From contig NW_003314302.1 in NCBI RefSeq assembly GCF_000143415.4, forward strand, positions 1,405,208-1,469,207: a stretch of DNA of 64,000 nt. The letters run 5' to 3'. A model generated the notes under the pieces. The model did no database searches. It was not told the origin of the DNA and was given only the letters and a program-made list of their open reading frames with translations. This document shows positions 13,943-60,500 of this stretch, in pieces. The position numbers were made by a program, and so were the translations under genes. This stretch comes from Selaginella moellendorffii (Eukaryota; Plantae; Lycopodiophyta). Position 1 is the first letter of the stretch. Every line of letters starts with the position of its first letter.

Positions 13943-14175
13943 TGTTAGGCGCCAGCTTTGACTATGTGGTCAACGTCGGTCAAAGGGAGGCTCAAGGGTA
14001 TATTAAGGCATGTTAGGGTAAGGGACTTAACCTACCCTAGGGCTCATAGTGGAGCGGCGGCATAATGGAGCTTTTGAGGTAGCTCGGGGGTGGTTGGGTG
14101 GTGAGGAACTTTAAGAGGTGGCATAGCATAGTCTAGGGCAATTAGATCTTTGTCTTTTTGCGCCGGATCATAACA
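13943..14175 (+). repeat. 3' LTR (about 233 bp) of the host gypsy element
   Basis: Begins TGTTA just after a polypurine tract and ends TAACA (inverted termini). Confidence 0.7.
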
Positions 14176-22063: not shown

Positions 22064-25000
22064 ATGAGAGAGCCTTTCCTCCAGAATGAAGGTACGTATT
22101 CACTCGCGAAAGAGGAGGAGAAGATCGTCACGCCTCACGCGACCGCCTCCGCTATCAGCATTGCGTTCTTCCGCTGGCTGGATCCACTCTTCGCCGCTGG
22201 TTCCAAGCGGCCTCTCCAGCTCGAAGATCTCCCGTGGCTTGGCGAGAGAAATTCCGCGGCATTCCTCTTCCAGAGATTGCGCGGGAGCTCGATCTGGGAT
22301 GCGATTTGGCGGCCGAATCGCAAGCTAGTGATCGCGAGCGGGATCGTCTCACTCTTGCACGTCTTGGCTTCCTACGCGGGCCCTTTCCTGGTGGCGGACT
22401 TCGTCGCGGCTTACGGCACTTCCCCAGGAAAGGGATTCGCGCTGGTGTCGGGGTTTCTTCTCGCCAAGATCAGCGCCAACTTGCTCGAGAGGCAGCGGCA
22501 TTTCATGCTGTGCCTGCTGGGACTGCGCGTCGAATCCTCCCTGGCGTGCCATGTCTTCCACAAGGCGCTCAAGAGCTCGAGGGTTTCGACTGGCGAGGTG
22601 GTGAACTTGGTCACCTCGGATGTCCGGCAAGTCGGGTGGTTTTGCTGGGAGATCCACAGCGTTTGGACGCTACCACTCGAAGCACTGCTCGGTTTGATCA
22701 TCCTCTACAGAGACGTCGGGCTTGCGAGCTTTGCGAGCGTTGGAGCGCTGATCGCTTGCACACTCTGCAACGTTCCACTCGCAAGTATTCAAGAGAAGTC
22801 GCAAGGCAAGATGATGCGAGAGCGGGATTGCCGGATGAGAGCTACTGCCGAGTCTCTGCGAAGCATGAGAACTCTCAAGCTTCATGGATGGGAGGAAAGT
22901 TTCTTGCGCAAGATGGAGCGCCTCCGAGCTGCCGAGTATGCCCATCTCTCCAGGTACTCTTACGTCCAAGCGTTGTCAAAGTACGTTTTTGCCACTGCTC
23001 CGTCGGCCATGGCTGTGGTTGCGGTCGCGTTGATGGCAAAGCTCCAGCCGGGGAAGATCCTTTCGGCAGTCGCAGTGTTTCGGATGCTGCAAAGCATGCA
23101 GGACGGGATCCCGGATTTCATTAGCTCTCTGGTGGGAGTTTGTGTCTCCATGCAGCGGTTGTCCAAGTTTTTCGAGGCCAGCGAAGTGGAATCGAGGCCA
23201 GAGTTTACAGGTTGTGGTGGTGGTGGTGCTGCTGCTGCGATCGAAGTAAGAGCGGCCAGTTTCAGCTGGGACAGGGATCCAGAGCATCCAACTTTGAAAG
23301 ACATAAACTTGGAGGTTCCCAAGAGATGTTTCGTGGCGATCACTGGAGCCGTTGGTTCTGCCAAGTCGAGCCTCCTTTCGTGTATCCTGGGACAGATGCC
23401 AAAGCTTTGTGGAGAGGTATACGATTTGATATCCTTACTTAACAGGCTCTGTCACAAAATAAATAATTCTTTCAGGTGATTGTGAGAGGCACAACTGCTT
23501 ACGTTTCTCAGTGGGCATGGATACAGCATGCTACCGTGAAGGAGAACATCTTGTTCGGGAGCGAGATGAACAAGGAAAAGTATGACAAGATCATCTCTTC
23601 TTGCCAGCTCAAGAGAGACTTGGAGATGCTAAGCCATGGCGACGAGACACGCATTGGCGATCGAGGTGTGACACTGAGTGGGGGACAAAAGCAAAGACTC
23701 CAGCTCGCAAGAGCCATGTACAAGGATGCTGATATCTATCTCCTGGATGATCCTCTCAGTGCTCTCGACACTCAAACATCCAGGGACATTCTCAAGGTAA
23801 GTGCGAACTCCCTGTCTCTTTTGTTCACGAGTTTAAGCACTTTTGCAGGAATGTATCCAAGGGATTCTGTGCACGAAGACCGTTCTACTTGTGACGCATC
23901 ATCTTCAGTCCATCCAAATGGCCGACAAAGTGATCGTAAGTCTGTCAGCAATTTTCAGGTAGAACTTGTTTCGATCTTGTCGTGGACCATGCAGGTAATG
24001 GCGAACGGGAGCTTATCAGTGGACTGCGCAGAGCAAAGCCGAGCGGCAGCAGAGAGTGCAACAATGGATGAGTCTTCCAATCAGGATCGAAAGGAAGATC
24101 CAGCCGAGATCCAGCAAAAGTTGGAAGAGCCAGAGGCAGCCGAGCAAAGGGAGTGTGGAAGTGTGAGCGGGGGCGTCTACTGGGCCTATCTAACATCAGT
24201 CTATCGAGGAGCTCTTATTCCAGTGATCTTAGTGTCACTGGCTATTTATCAAGGCTTGCAAGCAGCCGCCACATGGGAAGTTGCGAGGCCGAGAACTTCC
24301 AAGGCAAAGCTTGTCATGGTTTTCGGTTTGCTCTCTTTGGGAAGCTCGCTGGCGTCACTCTGCCGAGTCTTGCTTGTCGCCGTGGTGGGATTGAAAACTT
24401 CACAGAAATTCTTTCTCGGCATGTACCGCTCGGTGTTCCTCGCTCCTATGTCGTTCTTCGACACTACTCCGATCGGACGTATCTTAAATCGTGTAAGCAT
24501 GTCTTTCAGCTCTCTCGCTAATCTTTTTCTTGCTCGATGCTGTGTGCTTGCAGGCTTCTACAGACCAAACCTCGGTAGATATCTCTGTGCCGCTGAGATT
24601 GTCCGAGCTAGCCGGCTACATGACCGAGCTCGTTACGATAATTGTCATCGTTTCATTTGTTTCGTGGCATGTCCTCCCGGTCTTCGCGTTTCTAGCTTCT
24701 GTGGCTTACTGCCTCCAGGTATTTGCTCTTGGCTACAATATTATTTCCTTTCTAAACTCCTTCCACGCAGAGATACTACATCAAGACAATTCGCGAGCTC
24801 CCAAGACTAATGGAGATCCAGCGCGCTCCCATCGTTCACCACTTTGAGGAGTCCCTGAGCGGCCTCGCCACGATACGAGCATTCCACCGGGAGCCACAGT
24901 TTCTCGAGAGATTGTTCCACCTCGTCGACGTAAACAACCGTCCACAGTTCCACAACTTTGCATCCATGGAGTTTCTGGCTCTCAGGATCGGCGTCCTTGC

Positions 25001-32100: not shown

Positions 32101-32180
32101 CCTCTAAATCAAATAAACGCGCCAATTTTTTTGGATTCTAGGGTTTATGGGTTTCTAGGTCGAGGCAGCCATGCTTGTGG

Positions 32181-34994
32181 ATGTTCCAAGCGCAATTGGG
32201 GAGAGGGTTTTGCAAGATCAGCGCTGCGGCTGCGATATTCTCGGATGCGCTAGCAGCGGCGGCGCCAGCGCCGCAGTCCCGGCTAATTGCCTGGATCAAG
32301 GAATGCGGCGGCGCCAGAGATCTGGAGCGAGGGCGGCGCATCCACCAAGAGGTGATTCGCAGCGGCCATGGCTCCGATCGCGTCGTGCTCAACAGCCTGG
32401 TGAGTATGTATGGGAAATGCGGCAGCCTGGATGATGCGATCCAGGTCTTCAACGCCATGGGGAAGAAGAATCGCGATGTGGTGTCGTGGAATTGCTTGAT
32501 GCTGGGCTATGCCGAGATTGGGGATGGGGAAGCCTGCCTGGGTTTGCTGGGAGGAATGCGGGAAGATGGAATCCGACCAAATGGAAGAAGCTTTGTGGCT
32601 GGGATCAAAGCCTGCTCGGCCAAGGGGGGATATTGTCGAGACAAAGGACAGATGGTTAGCTTGAGATCGTTGGAGATTGGAATGGCTCTTCATTCCCAGG
32701 CTCGCGAGAGTGGATTCGAGTCGGATATTTTCGTGGCTGCCACCTTAGTCGACATGTACGTGAAGTGTGGAAGCTTGGTGGATGCTCGCGGGGTTTTTGA
32801 GAGAGCTCCTTTCCACAACACGGTGCTGTGGAACGCTTTGGTGATGGGATATGTTGAGAATGGAGAAAGCGAGCTAGCTCTGGAGCTTCTCCCATACATG
32901 AAACGAGAGGGATGTGATCCAGATGCTAGAACTTTCGTAGCAGCGCTCAAGGCTTGCGGAAGTTTTGCAACGACAGAAGAAGATGATGATCTTGGTGGCA
33001 ATAGAATACGGTACTTGGAAAGAGGGATGGCCTTGCATTCCCAGGCTCTCGGACTCGACTCCTCGGACATCTTCGTGGCCAGTGCTCTCATCGACATGTA
33101 TGGGAAGTATGGAAGCCTGCTTGACGCACGAAGAGTTTTTGACAGGATTGAGATCTCTCGGCACGATGTGGTCTCGTGGACTGCTTTGATCATGGCCTGT
33201 GTGGAAAACCGTGAAGGAGGGCTGGCTTTGGAGCTGTTTGAGCACATGAAGGCCTCGTCCTGTGCTCCAAACAGCCGAAGCTTCGTCGCTGCTTTGAAGG
33301 CATGCACCAGCTTGGCAGCTATAGAGGAACCACGGCAGGGTCTCGAAGGGAAGTTTGTCAAGATCAAGACGTTACAGAGAGGTGCTTCACTCCATGCCGA
33401 AGCTGCTGGCCGTGGCTGCGAGGTGGATATCTTCGTGGCCAACACTCTCTTGGAGATGTACACAGTTTGTGGAAGCATGCTCGAGGCACGGAGAGTTTTC
33501 GACAGGACGAACGACCGAGACGTTACGTCGTGGAACTCGATGATACTGGGGTATGTGGAGAATGGACAGGACGAGCTAGCGCTGGAGCTTATCGATCTTA
33601 TGGAGAAGAAACGAGAGTGTTTGCCGAATGATCTCACTTTTGTGGCGGCTCTCAAAGCCTGTAGCAGTCTCGCCATCAAGGAAACCGGTCAGAAGATCTG
33701 CGGGAAGATCGTCAAGCTCAACTCACTGGTCAAAGGCTTTGATATTCACTCAAAAATCATCTCCAAGAGCAGCTGCTGTGACTCGCTGAGCTACACAACC
33801 AACGCGCTCATCGACATGTACACGAAGTGTGGGAGCCTGGTGGATGCACGAAGAGTATTTGACAGGGTGGTTTCGCAAGACGTTGTTTCATGGAACGTCT
33901 TGTTGCTTGGCTATTGCGAGAACGGAGAAGAGTCTCTCACGTTGCAGCTATTCCAAGCAATGCTCGGTGCCGGCTGGTGCTGCAAGCCCGATTTTAGAAC
34001 TTTTTGCGCTGCGTTCAAGGCTTGCAGCTGTCTCGCCGCCAAGGAAACTGGACAGGAACTCGCTGGAAAGGTCGTTAAGGTGGAATCCTTGAGAAAAGCC
34101 AGGATGCTACACTCACAGGCTCGGAGCTTTGGGATCGGGCTGAAAGCTTACGTTGCAAGCTCTCTGGTGGATATGTTGGCAAAGTGTGGCAGCATGGACG
34201 ACTCTCGCGGAGTTTTTGACAGGGTACCTGTGCATGATACGTTTTCTTGGACCGCACTCATGCTGGGATACGCTGAAAGTGGTGACGGTGACCGTGCTAT
34301 GGAGCTCTACTCCCAGTCTAGGCCACCAGAACAGGACGCTCAAACTTTCATCGCTCTTCTCAAGTGCGTTGGAGTTTTGGAGAGTGGAAAGATCATCCAT
34401 GGCGACATGTGTAGAGCTGGGCTGGAAGATGGTGCGGTCCTAGAGGCAACCTTGGTGGATGTATACGGAAAGTGGGGGAGCATGGACGATGCTCAACGCG
34501 TTTTTGACGCTCTCTCGGCTGCCAAAGACAAGCTCGTGTCCTGGAACGCGCTGCTTGGAGGCTATGCCCGTCAAGGTGACACCAAGAACGCTTTGAGGCT
34601 GTTCGAGGAGATGCAAGAACAAGGCCTGGAGCCCGACTCAGTGACGTTCCTCTCGGTTCTCACTGCTTGCAGCCACGCTGGTCTGGCCGAGACCGGCAAG
34701 AGATACTTCGAGACAATGCAACTCAAGCACGGCATTGAGCCAGGGATGTCTCACTATCACTGCATGGTGGACGTTCTCGGCAGAGCCAACCGCGTGGAGG
34801 AGGCTGTCCAGCTCGTAAAGTCGATGCCTTTCAAGGCGAATGCAGTGACTTGGAGGACTGTTTTAAGTGCCTGTCGGAAATGGAGGCACGAGGTGACTGG
34901 AAAGCTTGCGTTTCAGTCGGTGTTGGAGACTGATTGTGGGGACTCTTCAGCTTACGTGTTGATGGCGAACATTTACAACGAGAGTGGCTCATAA
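32181..34994 (+). CDS. PLS-class pentatricopeptide repeat protein with E-type tail, no DYW (probable organellar RNA editing factor)
   Basis: Intronless. Repeated L(V/I)DMY.KCGS..DAR.VFD / DVVSWN motifs. Ends HYHCMVDVLGRA...TWRTVLSAC...SAYVLMANIY. First in-frame ATG at 32181. Confidence 0.93.
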   Translation: MFQAQLGRGFCKISAAAAIFSDALAAAAPAPQSRLIAWIKECGGARDLERGRRIHQEVIRSGHGSDRVVLNSLVSMYGKCGSLDDAIQVFNAMGKKNRDVVSWNCLMLGYAEIGDGEACLGLLGGMREDGIRPNGRSFVAGIKACSAKGGYCRDKGQMVSLRSLEIGMALHSQARESGFESDIFVAATLVDMYVKCGSLVDARGVFERAPFHNTVLWNALVMGYVENGESELALELLPYMKREGCDPDARTFVAALKACGSFATTEEDDDLGGNRIRYLERGMALHSQALGLDSSDIFVASALIDMYGKYGSLLDARRVFDRIEISRHDVVSWTALIMACVENREGGLALELFEHMKASSCAPNSRSFVAALKACTSLAAIEEPRQGLEGKFVKIKTLQRGASLHAEAAGRGCEVDIFVANTLLEMYTVCGSMLEARRVFDRTNDRDVTSWNSMILGYVENGQDELALELIDLMEKKRECLPNDLTFVAALKACSSLAIKETGQKICGKIVKLNSLVKGFDIHSKIISKSSCCDSLSYTTNALIDMYTKCGSLVDARRVFDRVVSQDVVSWNVLLLGYCENGEESLTLQLFQAMLGAGWCCKPDFRTFCAAFKACSCLAAKETGQELAGKVVKVESLRKARMLHSQARSFGIGLKAYVASSLVDMLAKCGSMDDSRGVFDRVPVHDTFSWTALMLGYAESGDGDRAMELYSQSRPPEQDAQTFIALLKCVGVLESGKIIHGDMCRAGLEDGAVLEATLVDVYGKWGSMDDAQRVFDALSAAKDKLVSWNALLGGYARQGDTKNALRLFEEMQEQGLEPDSVTFLSVLTACSHAGLAETGKRYFETMQLKHGIEPGMSHYHCMVDVLGRANRVEEAVQLVKSMPFKANAVTWRTVLSACRKWRHEVTGKLAFQSVLETDCGDSSAYVLMANIYNESGS

Positions 34995-49633: not shown

Positions 49634-50190
49634 TGGTAAGTCTCCAAGGTTAAGTAGCTTCTAGTTTCCCTCGGTTTTTTTACTGTTGTTGTAAAAGATG
49701 TGTTTTCTTTTTTGCAAATTCTAGGCATTATCGGACTAGTGACTCGAGTGAAACCATCGCTTCGACTCGTGAATACTCGCTTATGGTGCTTTTAATCTCC
49801 AAGGTTCTGATTGCTTACTCGGATTTTATAGTTCTAAAAACAGTTCTTCTGTTTCAAGCATTATCACATGAATCACACTGGGAAATGGCTTCCACTCGTG
49901 AAGTTAGTGAATGTGATTAAATGGTGCTTTTAATCTCCAGGGTAAGTAGCTTCTATACTCGTTCTAAAAATGTGTGTAATTATCGCATGAATCACACCAG
50001 TGACTCGAGTGAGACCATACTCGTGAATTTGGGCCTTTAATCTCCAAGGTAAGTAGCATACTACACTCGTTCTAAAAGTTCTAAAACATGTGCGTGTGTT
50101 TTTTTAGTGACTCGAATCTTCTACTCGAACGTGATTAAATGGTGCTTTTAAAGTAAGTAGCTTCTCGGATTTTTTACTGCACTCGTTCTG
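49634..50190. repeat. Degenerate tandem array upstream of the CYP78A pseudogene
   Basis: About 5 copies of (TGGTGCTTTTAAT)CTCCAAGGTAAGTAGCTTCTA and 3 of GTGACTCGA, at about 110-160 bp spacing. Confidence 0.65.
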
Positions 50191-50644
50191 TTTTTATTTT
50201 CTTTTTTTTGTAGATTAGTGACTGTGATTTGCTCTTAATGAGGTTGGAAGATTTTTAAACTAGTAACGTCGCGCGTTTTTGAATTTTAGGGCAATAGTAT
50301 CTTGGTTCGATTCCCGTTCGACAGGCGCATCGCACGGCCCTGGCAGCGCCACGTGGCCAATCTCTTTCCATACAGATATGTATATAAAGGCCACGATAGC
50401 CATGGCCAGAGTTTAGGGTAATTGTTTTGGCGATGGCGAGGGCGCAAAGGTAGGATCTCTTCCGGTCTTGCGAATCTCTTTTCCCGATCGATCGCGCAGA
50501 AATATGTGCCCTCCATGCGAAGCGTCCGGGGACTGTGGCGGCGGCGCCAGCGGCGGTGCTGGATTGAAGCGGAATCTAGAGCGCCGCGGGGCAGCGCCAG
50601 AGGAATTGGTTCCAGCCGGTTCTCTTCCAAGTCGGTTTGCGAGG

Positions 50645-51989
50645 ATGGATCGAAAAGTGGCGATCATGGGTGTGAGGCCGACAGCTCGCTACAGGCGATC
50701 TAGCGCTGGGGCTGGAGCATCGGGCTCGGCTCAATCGCCGATTGTTTTAGGGGGTGGGGCTGGCCACGCAGCAGGGCCGGAGATTATCGATCTGGAAGCC
50801 GAGGTTGGTTCTCCAGGGATAGGAGGAGCTTCTCATTCTTTCCTTGACGGGGAGGGTTCTAGCCAACCTTTGCCGAAGCGACAAAGAAGCTTGAGGGCTG
50901 ATGGCTCTCCAGCTGCTGTTACTCCTGCGGCTGGAAGACTTGGAAGAGGAAGAGCTCATGGAGCAGCAACTTGGGGTAGAGGACCAAGGCAGCATCAAGC
51001 ACCGGGTGGTAGAGGCGTGGTGAGGCCGATTGATGTGGATAGTGTTGTGGAGGTGGAGGCGCGAGCTTTACAGGTGAGTGAAGACGAGAGGCTTGCGAGA
51101 GAGCTGCAAGAGGAGTTCTCCACTGCCGGGGTACGTTCCTTTTGCTTTTCTGTCTAGAGTTCATGTCTTTTGTTCTTCTTTTCTGAAGCAGAGAGATGCT
51201 AATTTGGCTAGGAGTTTGCAAGAGCAAGAACAGCGCCAGCAGCTTCGTCACGCTATGGGCCATGGAAATGCTGAGCGGTTGTATTACAGGCGGCTGGAAT
51301 CGGTGCATGCGAGGATCCAGCAGGCGTTGGAGAACAGGCAGCGTAGCGGACTGCCAGGCAGATTCCGCGGTTTAGAAGAGGTATGCTTTTTTCACGAGTT
51401 TTACAAGTTTGTTTGCATACTTATCTTTCTTTTCGACCAGCGCTTGAATGAATTTGGAGCTATGCTGCGTAGGAGTATACCCCTTGCCATGCAATTGGCT
51501 TATGTTGACCGCGACTTCAACGAGTAAGCTTCTGTGTTTTCCGTGAAAGCTTCCGTGATCTTGACTGGAGACTTTTTGCCTTTTCTCGCTGCGGCAGGAA
51601 TGATTACGAAACGCTTTTAGCTTTGGACGAAGGTGTGAAGCAGCGAGGAGCTTCTCAGGCCCGGATTGACGCTCTTCCAGTTTCGGAGGCAGTGGTATGA
51701 TTATCTAGCTTCCTTTTGCCTTTGTTTCCATTTTCTAGTTTCTTACGGACAAGGATCGACAGGAAACGGATAAAAGCGAGCCATGCTCGATTTGCCTCGA
51801 GGTTCCAGTAGGCGGAGAGGAGATCCGCCGCCTCCCATGCTTGCATGGCTTCCATAAAGAGGTAAAAGAGACGCTGGTCCATCCATCTCTTTCGCCTCGT
51901 TATCTGACCAGTGTCTGCTTGGCTTGCAGTGCATTGATACTTGGCTCCAACGGCGTGCAAACTGTCCGGTGTGTAAGGCTTCGGTCTAA
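50645..51989 (+). CDS. RING-H2 E3 ubiquitin ligase (multi-exon)
   Basis: [17 protein letters not shown], then CSICLE...[18 protein letters not shown]...CPVCK; stop at 51987-51989. Confidence 0.88.
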
Positions 51990-52656
51990 AGTCCCAAATC
52001 TCGTCCATGGCCAAGGCAGTGAAAGGAGACAAGCAATGCACGTAAGTACTCTTGTGTTTTTAGCTACGTAGCCAGTTTCGCTCAAGTTCCTGTCGTGCAA
52101 ATCGCAGAGGTAGCGGCCTTCGCTTCCGTATGTACTCGCATTCAAGTGGAAAAGAAGCTCGAGAATTTCTACTTCTTGGGCTTTGGATCGTCCGCTGGAT
52201 GGAAGTGGTTTCCTCTCAAATCGAGCTTGCGAGAGTACAAACTAGAGAAGGAGCAGTAAAAGAGCCTGTGAGAGGTACGCGATTGGATTCAAAGCTCCTA
52301 CACTTATAGATCTTCTCCTTGGAGAAAAAAAAAATACAAAGGTTGATCTTTCGAACTGACTGCCAGTACTTCGTACGTAGGGAGTTCATGCACTTTGCGA
52401 TGTATTTTGACTTGGCTTTTACGGTTTTTACCTGTGGTTGTTACCGAAGGTAAAGTGTGCATTACCGTTCGTACAGTTTTACTGTATCGTACGGGAATGA
52501 TTAAGAATGATGAAACCCTATTCTTCGTCCTGTCGATGGGTTTTGGATGTTGGCATTTGCCAGGAGAAGGAATTCCAAATCTCTGAGAAAAGCAAAGAGA
52601 TATCATACCAACAATTCTTTATTTTTTCAATGTGGATCTTGGGACACACAAATCAA

Positions 52657-54036
52657 TCAGCCTAGCAAAGCAAGAGATGGATCAAATCGATCAAATTGGG
52701 AAGAATGCGCGACCTGGATCAAGTTGGGAAGAGGAAGAACTGGATCATTACAGACTCCAGGGGGGGTCCTCCAAATTGGCGAAGCTCCCGAGCTGCGAGG
52801 CTTCGTGCGCCAGTGGAATCGGCCACACCTAGAAGACGAAGAACGCAAACTCATTACTGTACTGTTCCAAATCTTTTTTAAAGGAGGGAATATGCCTAAG
52901 GCATATCCCTCCTTCGTCTTCCTTACGAGAGTGTAAGCCCGCGACTCGAGAGGCTCCAGCGTCACGCCGCGCTCGTTGGTGGGAACGATTCGCCCAAGCG
53001 CTGGATCGAAGAGCGCCGCGCCGTCGCCAAAGTGGCCCACGAGATCGAAGGGCGATTTGTCGTCGATGATAGAAACCACTCCCCCGTCAATCACGATCTG
53101 GGCAGCAGCATACGACTGCGCGGCGGGATGGTGCAATTGCTCCGACCCTGCACAGAAAAAAATGGCTGGCCCGTTTAGGAGAGGAAAAGAAAGGAAGCAA
53201 AGATCTTGCCCAGTCCAGTCTAGCTAGGAGTATACGGCACTGCTCGCTCTGGGACTTGTCTATCTATCTATCAGGACGAGAAGAAACAAGGAAGAAGAAA
53301 ACCTCTCATTTTTCTCGTTCTTCTCTTTTTTTGTTCGCACCCAGGAGGACGAAAATGAAAGACCGATGGGATTGATCGAAAGAGATGGAGAAAGAAAGAG
53401 AGAGAGAGGGAGAGGGAGCAGTAGTGTCGCTCATTGATTTACCGGATGAAGCTGAAGCGGAAGCGCTAGGGGCGGAGGAGGACAAATCCTGCTGGAAAGC
53501 GGCGGTGGCACTGGCGGCGGCGGGAGAAGAAGAGGCGGAGGCGCCAGAGACGGCGTTGGCCTCCTCGATGCGGCGCCGCTTGCGTTTCTCGCGGGACTTC
53601 TTGTTCTGAAACCAATAGTACACTTTGGATTCGTCCACCGGGCCGTGGTGGCCGATGAGCTCGGCTATCTCCGTGACGTTTTCTTGCGATGGCGGCGTCC
53701 CTTTCGCGTAGAATTCCTCCAGGATGGCCAGCTGCTGACTGTTTGGCCGCCACCGCTGCTGCGCGGGCCTTGTCGGCGCTGGCGGCGCTGGCACGGATGA
53801 GATTTCGATGTGTTTCCTGCGACCTTGCAGAAGAACAAATGGGTAGTCAGTGCTTGCAAGCAGCAAAACGACGGCAAAACGAAAACAAAACGGTCGAGAG
53901 AAATATATATACTTCTGTGATGCATATGCAATGCCTTTAGCTCCAGGAGCTCTGTGTTGATATCCCGCTCCTGATCGATCTGATCAGACTCGGACGACGC
54001 CGGCGATGAAGCCGCCTGCTGCTCGCACCGCCTCAT
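52657..54036 (-). CDS. WOX: WUSCHEL-related homeobox protein with WOX9/11-type C-terminal domain
   Basis: Homeodomain RWRPNSQQLAILEEFY...KVYYWFQNKKSR. Spliced (53442/53147) to a C-terminal exon IVIDG...FDLVGHFGDGAALFD...VPTNERGVTLEPLE..YTLV. The first exon and exact stop (52657, or 52829 if another intron is used) are uncertain. Confidence 0.82.
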
Positions 54037-54965
54037 TCTTCCGGGGATCGATCGATCTAGTGAAGAACAACCGAAAGAAAAGAGAGGAGGGATCGAGTTG
54101 CTCCCACAGGGAGCTGGAGATATGGAGGAGAAAAGAAGAGAGCGCCGGGTCGTGTTGTGTTTCCACCTGATCTTTGGGGTTGACGACGTAATCACTGCGT
54201 CAGGTATATTCCTTCGCACTTACCATTTTTACTTACTTTGTGACGCCAGTAAATACGTTCCCACAAATCAATACTTACTGCCCGCGCTGCGGCCTACATT
54301 CCCTTGTGCGTATTTTAATACGTATCCAGAGAAATTCTCTCCCACCCGGTATGTATTTGGTAAGTTTTTCTGTACTTTTGCGGGCCGAGTAAAAACCGTC
54401 AACGACAACCTTCGGAGGGTTAAGATAATCAAGCAACGTCACAACTTTAAAATTCACGCAGCATTAGCATGCTATCTTAATGTGAAGATAAATCACAATC
54501 TCTTATCTACTCGTCTCAAATCTTTTTCTTTTCTATACAAGAAAATCTTCTGTGTTCTTCTTCTTCTTCTTCTTCTGAAATTCTTCTTGTTTTTATATTG
54601 TTTTCCTCTTCTCCAATGTTGAGAAAGATTTGGATTGGGATTTGAGATGCTAGCAGCAGCTGCAGCCTTGCATTGTTGCAGGGGGGGCACTGAAGCGTGA
54701 TTGGGTGTGATGAGATTTTCAAGAGCAGTATCTAGAGAGCATTAGATGTGGCTTCCTTGTCTATCATGAATCTGGGGCTTCAAGATTTCTTGAGAAATGC
54801 ATTGGAATTTAAGGATCACATGAAACCTGCAGGAGCAGATAGAACCACCACCCAAACAAAATTATGCTAAGAAAAAAGATGCCAATCGGATTCGAACCAG
54901 AAGAAAAAACTACTGTTCTCTCTTTTGTTTTACTCTCACTCCCAATCTCTCTCTTCTATTTCATC

Positions 54966-55429
54966 CTATGTTGGGCTCAGTGCGGGCTCGTCACGAACAT
55001 TTGCGGCAGGCAGCGTGTAATCGTCATCCTGTTCTGAAAGGCCTCGACGCCTGCAGATTGGGCTTGCGTCGAATGGCTCACATCCGCTCTCGAACGGAAT
55101 ACTAGACAGATTCTAGGGATTATTCGTGTTAAAAAATACTCATGCTTGGAAACTCGCCTCTATCTTAGAGCTTTGAAATGGAGACAAACTCACCTCCTGC
55201 TCTTCGAATCTCTGTGATGGCAAAGAGCTCGTCTCGTCATTTGAAAAGATCACATCTTCCAGCTCTACAAGGATCACGATGGATATTTCATGCTTAGAGT
55301 GATTTTAGTACCTTTAAAAGCAAGCCCCCCGTGATCATTTTCCAGGAATCTGGATTCGCAGCTCTGTACCACCAAGCCCGCAGTTGTAATCAAAGAGAGG
55401 AGCAGCAACGCGAAGCGGAACTTGCCCAT
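54966..55429 (-). CDS. Small secreted tyrosine-sulfated peptide precursor (PSY-like with PSK-like Cys pro-region), 111 aa, 3 exons
   Basis: Exons 55429-55312, 55264-55194 and 55112-54966 with GT-AG introns of 47 and 81 nt. Product: MGKFRFALLLLSLITTAGLVVQSCESRFLENDHGGLAFKELEDVIFSNDETSSLPSQRFEEQENLSSIPFESGCEPFDASPICRRRGLSEQDDDYTLPAANVRDEPALSPT*. Confidence 0.75.
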
Positions 55430-55689
55430 GGATCCGAGCGCAGCCTGAGCGAATGGTCACCGGGCCGACGTTAAATCAATGTGTGATATAAAATAATACT
55501 ATTTTAACGACCAGAATTCTACGCGCACATCGTCGAAGTGGTTCCTAACATGCACGAAGTTGCAAAAAGTCAAACCCGGCCGCACCAACTTACGCTTTCG
55601 ATCACATGCCTGCCTGTCAATGCGCTGACCAGATTTTATAAGAGACCCCCTGATTAAAGAGTTGTAGTGGAAAAAAAAAAACCTTTCTG

Positions 55690-56622
55690 GGATAAACCCT
55701 AAACTGTGTATTTTATTGATTATTCCTCTCTCTTATGGAACTGTGTAGCCATCCATCTCAAAGTCCACAATGATTCCACGTCCTCGGCGGACGCCACAGT
55801 CGCAACAACGCCTTCCTCTTTGACGTGCTCCAAATGACCGCGAACGCTTTGAAATCTGAGTAAAGATCAGTGATACGCGATAGATCCCTTGAACAGCTTG
55901 CGTTCTTCCTCTGTGATTCCTAGCATGTAGCAGGCGGAGAATGTACTGGAATGGACGAAAGAGGGCGCAGATACCATTGTATCTGGAAGCTGACAAAATC
56001 AATGATGGCTTTGGTACCGTCCAGTTCAAGCTCTCTCATGAACTGGACTTGTTGTCGACGGTCTTACCAGGTTCGGGTCTCAATACGCCTGAGTGAAAGA
56101 CAGACCGTGAGAAACTGCTAAACGCGGTGTCTCGAGCTTTAGCAGAGACGTCGCAAGTCCAACTGCTCGCTCGAGCCCAAACGTTGTTCTCCGACGAATT
56201 CACCTCCATTTTCCGGAAGCCTCCGTCGCCACCACTCACAAACCGACCCAACAGCGCCAGGAACGTTCATGGCTTCCAGCGGTGACGCGCATCCTCTGTA
56301 TGCTTTTATGATAATTCACTTAAATCGTTCCTTGTGTTCGTTCGCATCTGACCACATACATGAGTAGTGCCTATAACTGCTACTAGTAAAGAGATCTTGG
56401 GCTTCACCCGCGAACCGAATTTAGGTTTGGCGACACGTTACTAGCAACGATTGGCTGGACATTCAAATGGCGCATTTGAATATCTATCGTCGGTAAGAGA
56501 AAATGAAGCCTGTGGGGTGCCGTCCCTAGCATTAGACGATCGATTGAGCCGAGAGCTAACACACTGTCTCCAGATCCTTGTCTGAAGAAGCCAGTTCATA
56601 GACACCATAGACGTGCCAGCTC
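55690..56622 (-). pseudogene. Heavily deleted duplicate of the PreP 3' half
   Basis: Colinear patches matching 57445-60265 compressed into about 0.9 kb. Confidence 0.8.
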
Positions 56623-56625
56623 TTA

Positions 56626-57175
56626 CCCTGAGAAAAGGAAAGATATCATACCTCAAAACACTTCTTTATTTTTCGGCACACAAATCATTCAACTGGAAGA
56701 GAATGGATCAGTAGAAATTCTTCCAGGGCTGGTCTTCCAGATCCAGATTGCTCCCGTGAGATCGGCAAAGTGAAAAAGAAAAAACCAGAGGAGTGAATAT
56801 TCCTTGCTAGCGAAGGCATATCCCTCCTTCGTCTTGGGGAGAGATCGCCATCACCATCCCTTTTCCTCTTTAGAAGAGGGATTGAAGAAAGCTCTCTATC
56901 TTGTGTGTTCTAGGTACAGAACCTTCAACTGATGCCGCTCGAGATCGTGAACAGACTAGCCGGCGATATCCTCGATGGATCGATCGACAGCCGAAAGAAA
57001 AGAGAGGAGGAGCTCGGGAATGAAGAATTGCGGTCTTACCATTTTTACATGAGACGATAGTAAATACGCCCCGCTGCCGCCAACATTCCCCTGTGGGTAT
57101 CTTAATACGTAGCTTGTGACTAGATAATAGCGGCTCCCTTCTCGCACAAACTTTCAAAGCCTTACCACATGCATG
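56626..57175 (-). pseudogene. Heavily deleted duplicate of the WOX locus flanks
   Basis: Patches match 52580-52920 and 54040-54470; the homeobox is missing. Confidence 0.72.
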
Positions 57176-57511
57176 TCCCATAAACTAGAAATTGAACGCG
57201 CACCACCCGTCGCACGCCATAACATACACATACGTTTCGATTTGAAAGAGCCGTCAAAATCTAGCGGCGTGGCAGCAAATCAAAGTTTAGTTTTTGTATA
57301 ATTTACTTTTCTCGTTGTACCTGGGATCATCGAGAACAAAGTCAGCAAGTTTCTAAGATCTTAGATTTCTTGCTTTACTGCTCGACTGCAGTGTGGAGCT
57401 GGCCCAGGATGAATCCACACTCTTATTTCAGATGTTTAGAGCGACAGAAACCCTAAACCGTTGACCAGGATATTCGCTCTTTATTCCTTTCTTATAACAA
57501 AACTGGCGCGC

Positions 57512-57530
57512 GTGTGTGTGTGTGTGTGTG
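57512..57530. repeat. (GT)n microsatellite
   Basis: About 10 GT units downstream of the PreP stop. Confidence 0.85.
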
Positions 57531-57540
57531 TCTTGTTTGT

Positions 57541-60500
57541 TTACAGGCTGACTTTCTTCGGCTGGAGGAGGCCTGGCCGCTCCTTGTTCGCGGATTCCAC
57601 GTCCTCGGCGGACGCTACAGCCGCGACAATGCCCTTCTCTTTGACGTGCTCAAGCACGTCCGCGAACGCTTTGAAATCTCTGAGGCTGCCAGCACAAAAG
57701 CGAGGAAGAGTAAAGATCTATCAAACCAGTGGTGATTGGAGTGACAACGCACCTTGTTGATAGGATTTGCTCCCTTCGCAGCTTGCGTTCTTCCTCTGTG
57801 ATTCCTAGAATGTAGCGGAGCATACTGGAATGGACGAGAGGAGGTAAGGAAATGCCAAAAGGGATGTAGATTTGTGCAGCGTACCTCGAGTAACCCTTTG
57901 CATCTGGAAGCTGATACGAATCAACATCTCCAATGGTGCCAATGATAGCTTTGGTGAGCGCGTCATCGTCCAGTTCAAGCTCTCTCAGGAACTGGACGGT
58001 TAAGTCGTAGTTGTCGATGGTCTTTGCCAGATTCGGGTCTCGGTAGGACAAGTATGTAAATACGCCTGAGAGAGACAGACAGAGATGTGACTGTGAGAAA
58101 CTACTAGACGGTGAATTACCCGAATGAGAATCGAAGTCGCAGAAGCCTCCGTAAGCGCCACCACTCACACGCACTCGATCCCACAGCCACGTGTTGCCAA
58201 TGTACTTGGAAATAACATACGCGCTTCCATCGAGCTCATATCCTGTATCGTACAAATTTGCTGCTTTACCAACGTAGTTCACCTGTGGGGAAAAAAAATC
58301 CAAAGTTACAAAAGGGAACGAGAGATTCTTCTCTTACCTGTGTGGGAACAATAATGCCTTCATTGCATGGTTGAAGAATACCATTCCACGTGCAAACAAC
58401 TGGCTCGGTTTCAGGCAGGGCTTCGAGTAGAGAACTGACAAAACTGTCTGCTTTAGTCAAATTCTTCTCATCTGCTGTCAAGTTCACGATGGCCCCTTTC
58501 CGAGACAGAAAACTCGTCCGAATTCTTTCCAGATTCTGTTGCACTGCGGGCCAGTCGGTGTCCACTTGCTTCTCTAATTCGCGCAGATAGTCTAGATAAC
58601 TGTACAGACGGTACTTAGAGGATAATTAAAGCGGTGTTATAAGTACCTGAGACCACCCATTTTCTCTCCAACAGCGCCAGGAATGTTCAGCATTGCGTCC
58701 AGCCGTGACGCCACAATTCTGTGGCCAGCACCTCTAAGGCGGCTCTGTAATGTTTTATGATAATTGTCAGCGAGATAAATGGTGCCGGCAACTTTACCTC
58801 CATGCCTGACTTGCTCTGGGACACAAACTGCTTAAATCGTTCCTTGTCAGTAAATTGTACGTCTTGAAGGATTGTTCGCATCTGATCACATACATGACAT
58901 GTAAGAGTAGTGCCCACGAATGCTAAAATACATACCAGACTAAAGAGATCTTGCGCCTGTGAAGCCATGGCTTTACCACGAATAATCATTTTGCTTGATG
59001 GTTCTTTTTTCCCGCGAACCGAGGACGTCGAAGGATAGACAGAAATGCCTCCTGTCTTTCGACCAATAAGCAGGTTTAGCGACACAAAATCCATGTCTTT
59101 TGTTCCCATCTCGAGCAAAGATTGGCTGGACATTTAAACGGCCCACTAAATATCGTCGATAAGAGGAACAGAAGTAGTACTGACCAGAAAAGCGGAACCA
59201 GGGGCAAAAGCTCAGAAGGAACAGTGCGCAGCTCAAAAGCAACTTCTGCATATAAGACATCATTGGTAAAGATATCATGACGTAACATAGTCGCGCCGTG
59301 CATTTCACCGATCTGATCAATCAGGCATTAGACGATGAGGAACGCTAATTATTGAACTTACAGCAATTGGAACGTGAATAGGCTCTTTTGGAATATCAGA
59401 CAGTGACAGAGATGGTACTGCTTTTAATGCCTCAGGAGGATCAGGCGTTTCTTGGCGCTTCTTTAGCTCCTCGGTTGCTCGAGCAAGTTCCTCAAGCTCT
59501 TGTTTTGCCAGGCTTGCTTTCACCTTCGCCAGTCTTTCCTTCTCCAAGGCTTCAATTTCTGCTGATTTTTCAGCATCCGGCTGAGCAACACCACTTCCAA
59601 ATCAGTACGAAGGGCCTTTTTCATGTAAGACCGTACCTGGAGCTCAACAGTCACAAGATGCTTGTTGCTAAGAAGGAAGTTCTGTATAAGTGGTGAGAAA
59701 ACTGCCTTAGCACCCTCCGTCGCTATTTTGGCCTTCAAATCTTCTAATGGCTTGGCGAATCTTAAAGGTTCAAATGGATCACGACCATACAGCCATTTAC
59801 CCTGTAAGAAGTGTCAGAAGAGCATGCATTAAATACCAAAATGTCTAAAATACTCACCATCGACCTCAGCATGAGAGATAGTCCGCGTGGGAACGATCCA
59901 GTGTTGTTCTCTCTTAGTGCAAACTCGATTGTGTTCATAGAAGCCTCGACAGCTTCAGACGTGAAACCTTCATCAGCCAGCTTTTGTAATGTAGATACGA
60001 TCAATTCCTCAACTGCTGGGATATCACTTTCGGCGACGCCTTTCATGCCGATACTAAATTGCGGTTGAAGGAGGTCATCTTCTACTCCGCTTGAAGTAAG
60101 AGCCTCTCCCAGGTGACTTTCAAGCAACGTCTTTCTTAGAGGTGCTGCTGGCGTCCCTAGCACTAGATGATCTAGAAAGCCGAGAGCTAGCTCAGTCTCC
60201 AGATCCAATGGCTTGTCTGAAAGAAGCCAGTTCATAGAGACCATATGCTTTTTGGACGTGTCAGTCTCCTCTCCTACTGCATATTTCTCTTTAATCTTCT
60301 TTGGCTCAGAGAGAAGACTTTGAGGTTTAACTTCGGATTCTGCTGCTGAGTTGTTGGCTTCAAAATTAGATAGATAGGCTGCTCCTCACACGGATCAGTA
60401 AATGCACGAACCATAAACTTAACACACTGACCATTCACGATTCGAAGTCGTTCAGTTGGATCATCGTCCCCATAAAACCATATCCTCGCATTACTGGGAT

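What the first reader, a model, noticed from the sequence alone, without database searches (positions are those of the whole stretch)
54966..55429. Hidden 3-exon peptide-hormone gene combining a PSK-type pro-domain with a PSY-type mature peptide
Seen: three short exons, missed by the ORF track, splice in frame at canonical sites. They give a signal peptide, an acidic spacer and C-terminal GCEPFDASPICRRRGLSEQDDDYTLPAANVRDEPALSPT. Known: PSY peptides start DY and follow DY-x-x-P-x-AN-x-x-H-D-P. Phytosulfokine precursors carry two Cys and a dibasic RR..L before DY(IYTQ). This precursor has the PSK-like C-x8-C-RRR-x-L scaffold but a PSY-like peptide, with Asp replacing the conserved His. Inference: a possibly undescribed sulfopeptide class or an evolutionary link between PSK and PSY in an early vascular plant lineage.
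Basis: partly seen in the sequence, partly recalled or inferred. Interest (0 to 1): 0.85.

Follow-up and report, generated by a model that had tools for sequence, protein, structure and literature searches.

The report
Divergent PSY-like peptide hormone gene
This is a real, expressed three-exon gene of the spikemoss Selaginella moellendorffii, already in public annotation as an unnamed protein, that most likely makes a variant of the known plant growth hormone PSY rather than a new hormone class or a PSK/PSY hybrid.

Summary
On the minus strand, exons 55429-55312, 55264-55194 and 55112-54966 splice in frame at GT..AG sites to a 111-aa product. Stranded RNA-seq shows both junctions at the predicted bases (129 and 97 reads in one run), and both alleles are expressed.

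The gene is not hidden. Its product is identical to S. moellendorffii SELMODRAFT_419271 (XP_002979621.1, "uncharacterized protein"). The second haplotype carries the allele SELMODRAFT_417552.

The C-terminal 18 residues, DYTLPAANVRDEPALSPT, align without gaps to Arabidopsis and moss PSY1. Of the 10 positions those two share, the candidate has 6 identical, 3 conservative and 1 radical change (His11 to Asp). So it is PSY-like, but it fails the published family motif DYxxxx[AP]NxxHxP at the His. The other allele also loses Pro13.

The "PSK-type pro-domain" is not supported:
- Pfam PSK does not match.
- RRxL is the generic SBT6.1/S1P site, also reported in AtPSY1-5 and RGF6.
- The His conserved in PSK precursors is absent.
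- Only the Cys-x8-Cys pair stays unexplained.

No homologue was found outside this species, so conservation, and any claim of a new class or evolutionary link, is untestable here. Other first-reader notes from this scan report further PSY-like candidates elsewhere in this genome; these are unverified.

Verdict: a modestly interesting variant of a known peptide family.

The parts
54724..55479 (-). Approximate transcribed span of the gene (short 5'UTR, about 240-nt 3'UTR at most)
   Evidence: Stranded RNA-seq depth profile. Coverage starts near 54724 and ends near 55479. A cluster of 17 molecule ends lies at 55427.
55312..55429 (-). Exon 1 coding part: ATG at 55429, 118 nt, residues 1-39 plus one base
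   Evidence: junction reads.
55361..55429 (-). Signal peptide (residues 1-23): basic n-region K3/R5, a 16-residue hydrophobic core, V-Q-S before the likely cleavage point
   Evidence: Read from the sequence. The AlphaFold2 single-sequence model gives helix 3-25 at pLDDT about 80 and the rest unstructured. No SignalP was available.
55265..55311 (-). Intron 1, 47 nt, GT..AG
   Evidence: It is skipped by 129 reads in X21, 7 in X22 and contigs in X1 and X6.
55194..55264 (-). Exon 2, 71 nt, acidic spacer
55113..55193 (-). Intron 2, 81 nt, GT..AG. A minor alternative acceptor 11 nt downstream starts the exon at 55101 and shifts the frame.
   Evidence: 97+6 reads and 2 contigs support the main junction; 11+2 reads support the alternative.
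54966..55112 (-). Exon 3 coding part, residues 64-111 plus TAG
55038..55082 (-). C74-x8-C83 followed by R84-R85-R86-G87-L88. RRGL is a candidate SBT6.1/S1P-type (RxxL) processing site 7 residues before Tyr95.
   Evidence: Sequence. Motif definition RXXL/RXLX and its presence in AtPSY1-5 and RGF6 come from PMC7913133. The stretch is identical in both alleles.
54969..55022 (-). PSY-like 18-residue C-terminal peptide DYTLPAANVRDEPALSPT (residues 94-111), preceded by D92-D93
   Evidence: Ungapped comparison with AtPSY1 and PpPSY1. It is the only hit of the relaxed PSY pattern in six frames of the window.
54986..54986 (-). Allelic SNP changing Pro106 (PSY position 13) to Ala in the second haplotype
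   Evidence: About half of the RNA reads carry it (33 of 77 in X21). Effect computed. The same change is in P0001 and L001.

Best explanation
The gene SELMODRAFT_419271 of Selaginella moellendorffii encodes a 111-aa prepropeptide. [quoted passage not shown]

Shown:
- The gene is transcribed from both alleles and spliced exactly as predicted.
- The product has an N-terminal signal-like helix, an acidic and apparently unstructured pro-region (pI 4.3), and one Tyr in a DDDY context.
- The last 18 residues line up, without gaps, with the mature PSY1 of Arabidopsis and moss.

Inferred mechanism:
- The signal peptide is removed in the ER.
- TPST sulfates Tyr95 in the Golgi.
- An SBT6.1/S1P-type subtilase cuts after RRGL (Leu88).
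- An Asp-directed subtilase or an aminopeptidase trims to Asp94.
- Pro110 may be hydroxylated or arabinosylated, as Pro17 of AtPSY1 is.
- The secreted 18-mer D(sY)TLPAANVRDEPALSPT acts on the single PSYR-clade LRR receptor kinase reported for this species. The His11-to-Asp change possibly alters its affinity or specificity.

The dibasic/RRxL site near the DY is a shared processing grammar of plant sulfopeptide precursors, not evidence of PSK ancestry.
For: - Gene model and expression.
- Identity to an annotated S. moellendorffii protein, plus an allelic copy in a collinear haplotype.
- PSY resemblance to AtPSY1: 7 of 18 residues identical. The BLOSUM62 score of 41 is the best of 127,894 six-frame 18-mers in the window (mean -23, sd 9.4, next best 33). 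A shuffle of positions 3-18 gives p = 5e-5.
- At the 10 positions shared by AtPSY1 and PpPSY1 (D1 Y2 P5 A7 N8 K10 H11 D12 P13 V15), the candidate reads D Y P A N R D E P L.
- It fits 5 of the 6 fixed positions of the published motif DYXXXX[AP]NXXHXP. It also meets the size and C-terminal placement criteria.
- RXXL sites are reported in AtPSY1-5 and RGF6, and Asp-specific SBT3.8 generates DY N-termini.
- TPST and one orthologue of the At1g17230/At2g33170/At5g63930 (PSYR) clade are reported in S. moellendorffii.
- The AlphaFold2 model has only the signal helix ordered.
- Atlas feature neighbours are small Streptophyta secreted-peptide clusters; these are leads only.
Against: - His11 is replaced by Asp in both alleles. 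It is present in 31 of 32 aligned PSYs and in the bacterial and nematode mimics. That invariance is partly circular, because family surveys select on the His-containing motif.
- The second allele also has Pro13 to Ala.
- The two alleles differ by 4 nonsynonymous and 2 synonymous changes in 333 nt, so constraint looks weak. The counts are too small to test.
- No homologue was found outside the species, so nothing shows that the motif is conserved.
- Published surveys describe PSY precursors as mostly basic and PSK precursors as acidic; this one is acidic.
- The Cys74/Cys83 pair, plus Cys24 at the signal-peptide border, has no role in this model.
- Sulfation, cleavage and receptor binding are all inferred.
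- Genome-wide, in six frames, a score of 41 alone could arise by chance. The argument rests on its coincidence with the secreted, C-terminal, DDDY context.
Confidence: 0.62

Rival explanations
1. It is a decaying or drifting PSY paralogue. The gene descends from a PSY gene but no longer encodes a functional ligand. It is still transcribed while the receptor-contacting core erodes (His11 to Asp, then Pro13 to Ala in one allele).
For: - Loss of the most conserved His, and an allelic loss of Pro13.
- 4 nonsynonymous against 2 synonymous allelic differences, with CDS divergence (1.8%) only modestly below introns and flanks (3.1-3.7%).
- Other PSY-like candidates are noted elsewhere in the genome by first readers and could carry the canonical function. 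These are unverified leads.
Against: - The reading frame, signal peptide, DDDY, RRGL and both splice sites are intact in both alleles.
- Expression is robust and clean, and differs about 15-fold between two samples of one study, which suggests regulation.
- GmPSY2 is accepted as a PSY without the last Pro.
Confidence: 0.15
2. It is a chance resemblance. This is a lineage-specific small secreted acidic protein with another role, for example a larger Cys-bridged product that is not cut at RRGL, and its C-terminus happens to look like PSY.
For: - The protein is an orphan in all sequence searches, and Pfam finds nothing.
- By my rough extrapolation, a score of 41 should occur by chance a few hundred times in six frames of a 212-Mb genome.
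Against: The match coincides with every contextual feature of a sulfopeptide precursor:
- a signal peptide;
- a length of 111 aa;
- the only Tyr preceded by DDD;
- an RRxL site 7 residues upstream;
- a motif that starts exactly 18 residues before the stop, the length of mature AtPSY1.

Matches fall on the positions shared by moss and Arabidopsis PSY1, namely P5, A7, N8 and P13, with R10, E12 and L15 conservative. My rough estimate of the joint chance expectation is about 0.01.
Confidence: 0.13
3. This is the first reader's reading: a new sulfopeptide class, or an evolutionary intermediate joining a PSK-type pro-domain (two Cys, RR..L) to a PSY-type peptide.
For: - C-x8-C followed by RRR-G-L, with the basic residues 9-11 positions before the Tyr. 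This is within the '8-10 residues upstream' described for PSK precursors.
- The precursor is acidic, as reported for PSKs.
- RRGL parallels RRSL of AtPSK4.
Against: - The Pfam PSK model gives no match at E<=10 on exon 3 or on the full protein.
- There is no YIYTQ, and the conserved PSK His and 'HT-DY' context are missing.
- RXXL sites are reported in AtPSY1-5, RGF6 and RALFs.
- A machine-read alignment of wheat PSYs shows ...ARRDLCTDY... in TaPSY6 (OCR, low reliability).
- There are three Cys in total, not a clean pair.
- There are no relatives to show conservation of the Cys pair.
Confidence: 0.07

Closest known systems
PSY family (AtPSY1-9, PpPSY1; ligands of PSYR1-3 LRR receptor kinases)
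   Same: - Secreted precursor of about 100 aa with the motif at the C-terminus.
- A DY start preceded by acidic residues.
- P5, A7, N8 and P13 identical to both AtPSY1 and PpPSY1; R10, E12 and L15 conservative.
- 18 residues from DY to the end, as in mature AtPSY1.
- An RxxL site upstream, as in AtPSY1-5.

   Different: - Asp replaces the near-invariant His11.
- One allele also has Ala for Pro13.
- The precursor is acidic rather than basic.
- A Cys-x8-Cys lies just upstream of the processing site.
- There is no detectable sequence relative.
PSY-like (PSYL) peptides of mosses (Lyapina et al. 2025)
   Same: They are a precedent for seed-free-plant DY peptides that resemble PSY but break its motif, with precursors of about 110 aa. 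The sulfated forms are bioactive in P. patens.
   Different: PSYL motifs are DYDNH*P / DYD*NHP. They keep N-H and shift its position. The Selaginella peptide keeps PSY spacing and loses the His. No sequence relationship was tested, because no PSYL sequences were held.
Phytosulfokine (PSK) precursors, Pfam PF06404
   Same: - Acidic precursor.
- Dibasic residues 9-11 positions before the sulfated Tyr.
- RRxL (RRSL in AtPSK4, RRGL here).
- An Asp before the Tyr.

   Different: - No YIYTQ.
- No conserved His at P1'.
- No Pfam match.
- The putative mature peptide is 18 aa of PSY type, not a pentapeptide.

RGF/GLV/CLEL precursors
   Same: A DY sulfopeptide at the C-terminus, SBT6.1 cleavage at RRxL-type sites followed by Asp-directed trimming, and Atlas feature neighbours that include RGF/GLV clusters.
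   Different: There is no ...P-P-x-H-N C-terminal end. Against AtRGF1 or MpRGF, the candidate is not among the best-scoring 13-mers in the window.

Membership tests
PSY | N-terminal secretion signal | tested here: met
   K3/R5, a 16-residue hydrophobic core and V-Q-S at -3..-1. AlphaFold2 gives helix 3-25 at pLDDT about 80. No dedicated signal-peptide predictor was available.
PSY | [quoted passage not shown] | tested here: met
   The precursor is 111 aa, and the motif occupies residues 94-106 of 111.
PSY | Asp-Tyr start of the peptide (TPST site), favoured by nearby acidic residues | tested here: met
   E90, D92, D93 and D94 precede Y95, the only Tyr in the protein. The requirement is described.
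PSY | [AP]-N at positions 7-8 of DYXXXX[AP]NXXHXP | tested here: met
   A100-N101.
PSY | His at position 11 | tested here: not met
   Asp104 (codon GAC) in both alleles. His is present in 31 of 32 aligned PSYs, in PpPSY1, in RaxX and in the MigPSYs.
PSY | Pro at position 13 | tested here: inconclusive
   Pro106 in the window allele and Ala in the other haplotype, with both expressed at about 1:1. GmPSY2 also lacks this Pro.
PSY | Tyrosine sulfation and release of a mature 14-21-aa peptide in vivo | not testable with these tools
   This needs peptidomics.
PSY | Perception by PSYR-clade LRR-RK | not testable with these tools
   It is only known from the literature that S. moellendorffii has one orthologue of that clade.
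PSK (PF06404) | YIYTQ pentapeptide | tested here: not met
   There is no such pattern in the protein or anywhere in six frames of the window.
PSK (PF06404) | Match to the Pfam phytosulfokine precursor profile | tested here: not met
   No family at E<=10 for exon 3, P0001 or P0004.
PSK (PF06404) | Dibasic residues 8-10 aa upstream of the mature peptide | tested here: met
   R84-R86 lie 9-11 residues before Y95. This is not specific, because RXXL sites also occur in PSY1-5 and RGF6.
PSK (PF06404) | Conserved Leu (P3), His (P1') and Asp (P3') around the SBT1.1 site (RRSLVL|HTDY) | tested here: not met
   The candidate has RRGLSEQDDDY. His is absent, and only the Asp before Tyr is shared.
PSK (PF06404) | Two conserved Cys upstream of the dibasic site | not tested
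The candidate has C74 and C83, plus C24. I held no PSK sequences with which to verify the spacing claimed for PSK precursors.
RGF/GLV/CLEL | DY...P-P-x-[HN]-N C-terminal 13-mer | tested here: not met
   The peptide ends ...ALSPT. The candidate is not among the top window matches to AtRGF1 or MpRGF.
PSYL (moss) | DYDNH*P / DYD*NHP motif | tested here: not met
   There is no N-H pair in the peptide.

The most novel reading that the evidence does not exclude
The His11-to-Asp peptide defines a lycophyte-specific PSY-like subclass with altered receptor specificity or antagonist behaviour towards the PSYR-clade receptor. The Cys74-Cys83 loop next to RRGL acts as a structural determinant of processing. 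This architecture would have been reached independently of, or be anciently shared with, PSK precursors.
Probability: 0.12. Interest if true: 0.55.

Novelty: new variant of a known kind. Interest (0 to 1): 0.33.

Why it matters
PSY signalling (TPST, PSY, PSYR) has been shown to work in angiosperms and in a moss, but I found no described lycophyte PSY in the papers searched.

A well-expressed Selaginella precursor that keeps the PSY spacing but lacks the 'invariant' His gives a natural test of what that His does in receptor binding. It also shows that motif filters requiring His will miss family members in seed-free plants.

It does not open a new hormone class on present evidence.

Tried and rejected
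- Pfam on exon 1, exon 3 and both full alleles at E<=10: nothing, including PSK.
- phmmer of exon 3 against 1.84 billion representatives: only the gene's own cluster, plus two unrelated weak hits to long repeat proteins.
- Word-indexed search of 5.8 billion proteins with the full protein: only the allele.
- ESM Atlas by features: generic plant small-peptide neighbours at 0.82-0.88 for the whole protein, and no usable hit for residues 64-111 among named clusters.
- Full-text search for the locus tags and accessions: no paper. The Furumizu 2021 supplements are not held.
- A search for a PSY-PSYR structure, to judge the role of His11: none in the library.
- Looking up other PSY-like notes of this scan: only titles, with no sequences to compare.
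- A second DY...HHP string at 14095-14133 (minus strand): rejected as chance, because the frame is full of stops.
- RNA-read islands at 55732-55771 and 55894-55931, tested as possible exons of a gene spanning this one: rejected. Three of the four flanking loose-end sequences are absent from the window at up to 3 mismatches, and the fourth matches only weakly at 57749-57778 with 3 mismatches.
- Read laying is capped at one call, so 'organism B' (run X20, which holds 23% of the words) could not be examined.

Full report
**What is there.**
- Exon 1 is 55429-55312 (118 nt). Intron 1 is 47 nt, GTACTA...TGTAG.
- Exon 2 is 55264-55194 (71 nt). Intron 2 is 81 nt, GTGAGT...CCCTAG.
- Exon 3 is 55112-54966 and ends in TAG.
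- The CDS is 336 nt and encodes 111 aa.

A bacterial-style ORF list breaks this into 51-, 45- and 34-aa pieces. That is the only sense in which the gene was 'missed'.

**Is it expressed and spliced that way?** Yes. Several runs hold 11-34% of the words of an 851-nt stretch around the gene, as expected if they hold only the exons. Two raw stranded RNA-seq runs and two contig sets from other studies were laid on 54400-56000.
- Junction 55264/55312 is seen in 129 and 7 reads and in two contigs.
- Junction 55112/55194 is seen in 97 and 6 reads and in the same contigs.
- Intron bins carry only the depth expected from the exon bases they contain.
- All pairs have the first mate on +, the usual signature of a minus-strand RNA.
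- A minor acceptor 11 nt downstream (55101; 11+2 reads, about 10%) shifts the frame into an early stop.
- Coverage spans roughly 54724-55479 and falls about tenfold just upstream of the ATG, with a cluster of molecule ends at 55427. The 5'UTR is therefore short, and the exact start site is not settled.
- Depth differs about 15-fold between two samples of the same study.

**Identity of the gene.** phmmer of exon 3 against 1.84 billion representatives returned one real hit, a 111-aa protein.
- The cluster has two members, both from Selaginella moellendorffii. They are SELMODRAFT_419271 (XP_002979621.1, UniProt D8S8D9), which is identical to my spliced product, and SELMODRAFT_417552 (XP_002977653.1, D8S2U4), which is 96% identical.
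- The second sits on scaffold GL377600.1, in a region collinear with window 50030-60434 at 95-98% identity. It is therefore the other haplotype of this two-haplotype assembly, not a paralogue.
- Its four amino-acid differences (F6S, V21L, R58K, P106A) are the same SNPs that about half of the RNA reads carry, so both alleles are expressed.
- The gene is thus publicly annotated but unnamed. No paper in the searchable library cites its identifiers.
- Neighbouring genes are a PreP-type M16 peptidase, a homeodomain protein and a RING protein. Elsewhere the window holds ordinary nuclear genes, a PPR protein and an ABC transporter.

**What the protein looks like.**
- It has a basic n-region, a 16-residue hydrophobic core and V-Q-S before a likely cleavage point.
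- The rest is acidic (pI 4.3; 20 Asp+Glu against 9 Lys+Arg), with three Cys (24, 74, 83) and a single Tyr (95).
- A single-sequence AlphaFold2 model orders only helix 3-25 (pLDDT about 80) and leaves the remainder near 50. This is weak evidence, but it fits a processed propeptide rather than a folded Cys-rich peptide.
- Pfam finds nothing in either allele.

**Is the C-terminus PSY-like?** Mature AtPSY1 is DYGDPSANPKHDPGVPPS and the moss peptide is DYEKPCANKKHDPSVCKNG. The candidate's last 18 residues, DYTLPAANVRDEPALSPT, align to both without gaps.
- It shares 7 of 18 residues with AtPSY1 and 6 of 18 with PpPSY1.
- At the ten positions where moss and Arabidopsis agree (D1 Y2 P5 A7 N8 K10 H11 D12 P13 V15), it reads D Y P A N R D E P L. 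That is six identities, three conservative changes and one radical change.
- Against AtPSY1 it is the best of 127,894 six-frame 18-mers in the window (41 against a next best of 33; mean -23, sd 9.4). Shuffling positions 3-18 reaches its score in 5 of 100,000 trials.
- A score of 41 would still occur by chance somewhere in six frames of a whole genome. What makes chance unlikely is the context: a secreted 111-aa product, the only Tyr preceded by DDD, and a motif beginning exactly 18 residues before the stop. This last step is my inference, not a computed statistic.

- DY, N, H and P are present in 31 of 32 aligned sequences. NXXHXP is also kept by the bacterial and nematode mimics.
- The candidate meets every item except the His, which is Asp (GAC, one base from CAC) in both alleles. 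The second allele also has Ala for Pro13, a loss with one precedent, GmPSY2.
- Because those surveys filter on the His, its invariance is partly circular. By the stated definition, though, this is 'PSY-like', not a strict member.
- Moss PSYL peptides are a precedent for bioactive DY peptides that break the PSY motif.
- The literature reports TPST and one orthologue of the PSYR clade (At1g17230/At2g33170/At5g63930) in S. moellendorffii. The machinery for such a signal therefore exists in this species.

**The 'PSK-type pro-domain'.** PSK precursors carry dibasic residues 8-10 residues before the peptide, and AtPSK4 is cut at RRSLVL|HTDY, with Leu, His and Asp conserved.
- The candidate has RRRGL-SEQDD-DY. 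The basic residues are in range and RRGL parallels RRSL, but the His is missing, there is no YIYTQ, and the Pfam PSK profile gives no match at E<=10.
- RRxL is the general SBT6.1/S1P recognition site (RXXL/RXLX). Tost et al. report it in AtPSY1-5, and it is cut in RGF6 before Asp-directed SBT3.8 produces the DY N-terminus.
- A machine-read wheat alignment even shows ARRDLCTDY in TaPSY6 (OCR, to be treated with caution).
- The dibasic/RRxL feature is therefore shared processing grammar, not evidence of PSK ancestry.
- The acidic pI is PSK-like according to one survey but is a weak character.
- What remains is Cys74-x8-Cys83, conserved between the two alleles like almost everything else. I could not compare it with real PSK precursors and cannot explain it.

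**Conservation.** No relative outside the species was found, which is common for peptide precursors but leaves the key question open.
- Between alleles the CDS differs at 6 of 333 sites (4 nonsynonymous), introns at 4 of 128, and flanks at 3.7%.
- This hints at weak constraint, but the counts are too small to test.
- First-reader notes from this scan list several other PSY-like candidates on other pieces of this genome. They are unverified and carried no sequence, so I could not ask whether canonical His-bearing PSYs coexist with this gene.

**Verdict.**
- The best reading (about 0.6) is a diverged PSY-lineage sulfopeptide precursor processed at RRGL and trimmed to DY. Whether it still signals through PSYR is uncertain.
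- It is a variant of a known kind, of modest interest. Its main value is as a natural His11 variant, and as a reminder that His-requiring filters undercount PSYs in seed-free plants.

Noticed in passing
window 55101-55112: A minor alternative 3' splice site starts exon 3 at 55101, 11 nt downstream of the main start at 55112. It is used by about 10% of junction reads (11 of 108 in X21, 2 of 8 in X22). It shifts the frame and ends the protein before the peptide.
   Followed up: partly
window 55732-55771 and 55894-55931: Two islands of about 40 nt attract many RNA reads and contigs that run on, on both sides, into sequence unlike the window. Of the four flanking loose-end consensus sequences, three have no match in the 64-kb window at up to 3 mismatches, and one matches only weakly at 57749-57778. 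The islands look like short fragments similar to a transcript encoded elsewhere, not exons of a local gene.
   Followed up: partly
window 54400-56000, runs X21 vs X22: Depth over the gene differs about 15-fold between two equally deep RNA-seq samples of one study, which suggests regulated expression. The sample conditions are coded and unknown.
   Followed up: no
window 55427-55479: Coverage falls about tenfold just upstream of the ATG, and 17 molecule ends cluster at 55427. One contig ends at 55432 and runs into adapter sequence. The 5'UTR may be very short, or there may be more than one start site.
   Followed up: no
window 14095-14133 (minus strand): The string DYAMPPLKVPHHP loosely resembles RGF/PSY motifs, but it lies in a frame interrupted by many stops. 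It is most likely chance.
   Followed up: partly
window 32175-34994 (+) and 22064-24810 (+): A 939-aa PPR protein with an E motif, and exons of an ABC transporter. These are ordinary nuclear genes, consistent with a gene-rich plant region.
   Followed up: partly
The look-up of sequencing runs row X20: A 2024 run labelled as a different organism (organism B) holds 23% of the sampled words of the gene region. It could be a close relative or a mislabelled or mixed sample.
   Followed up: no
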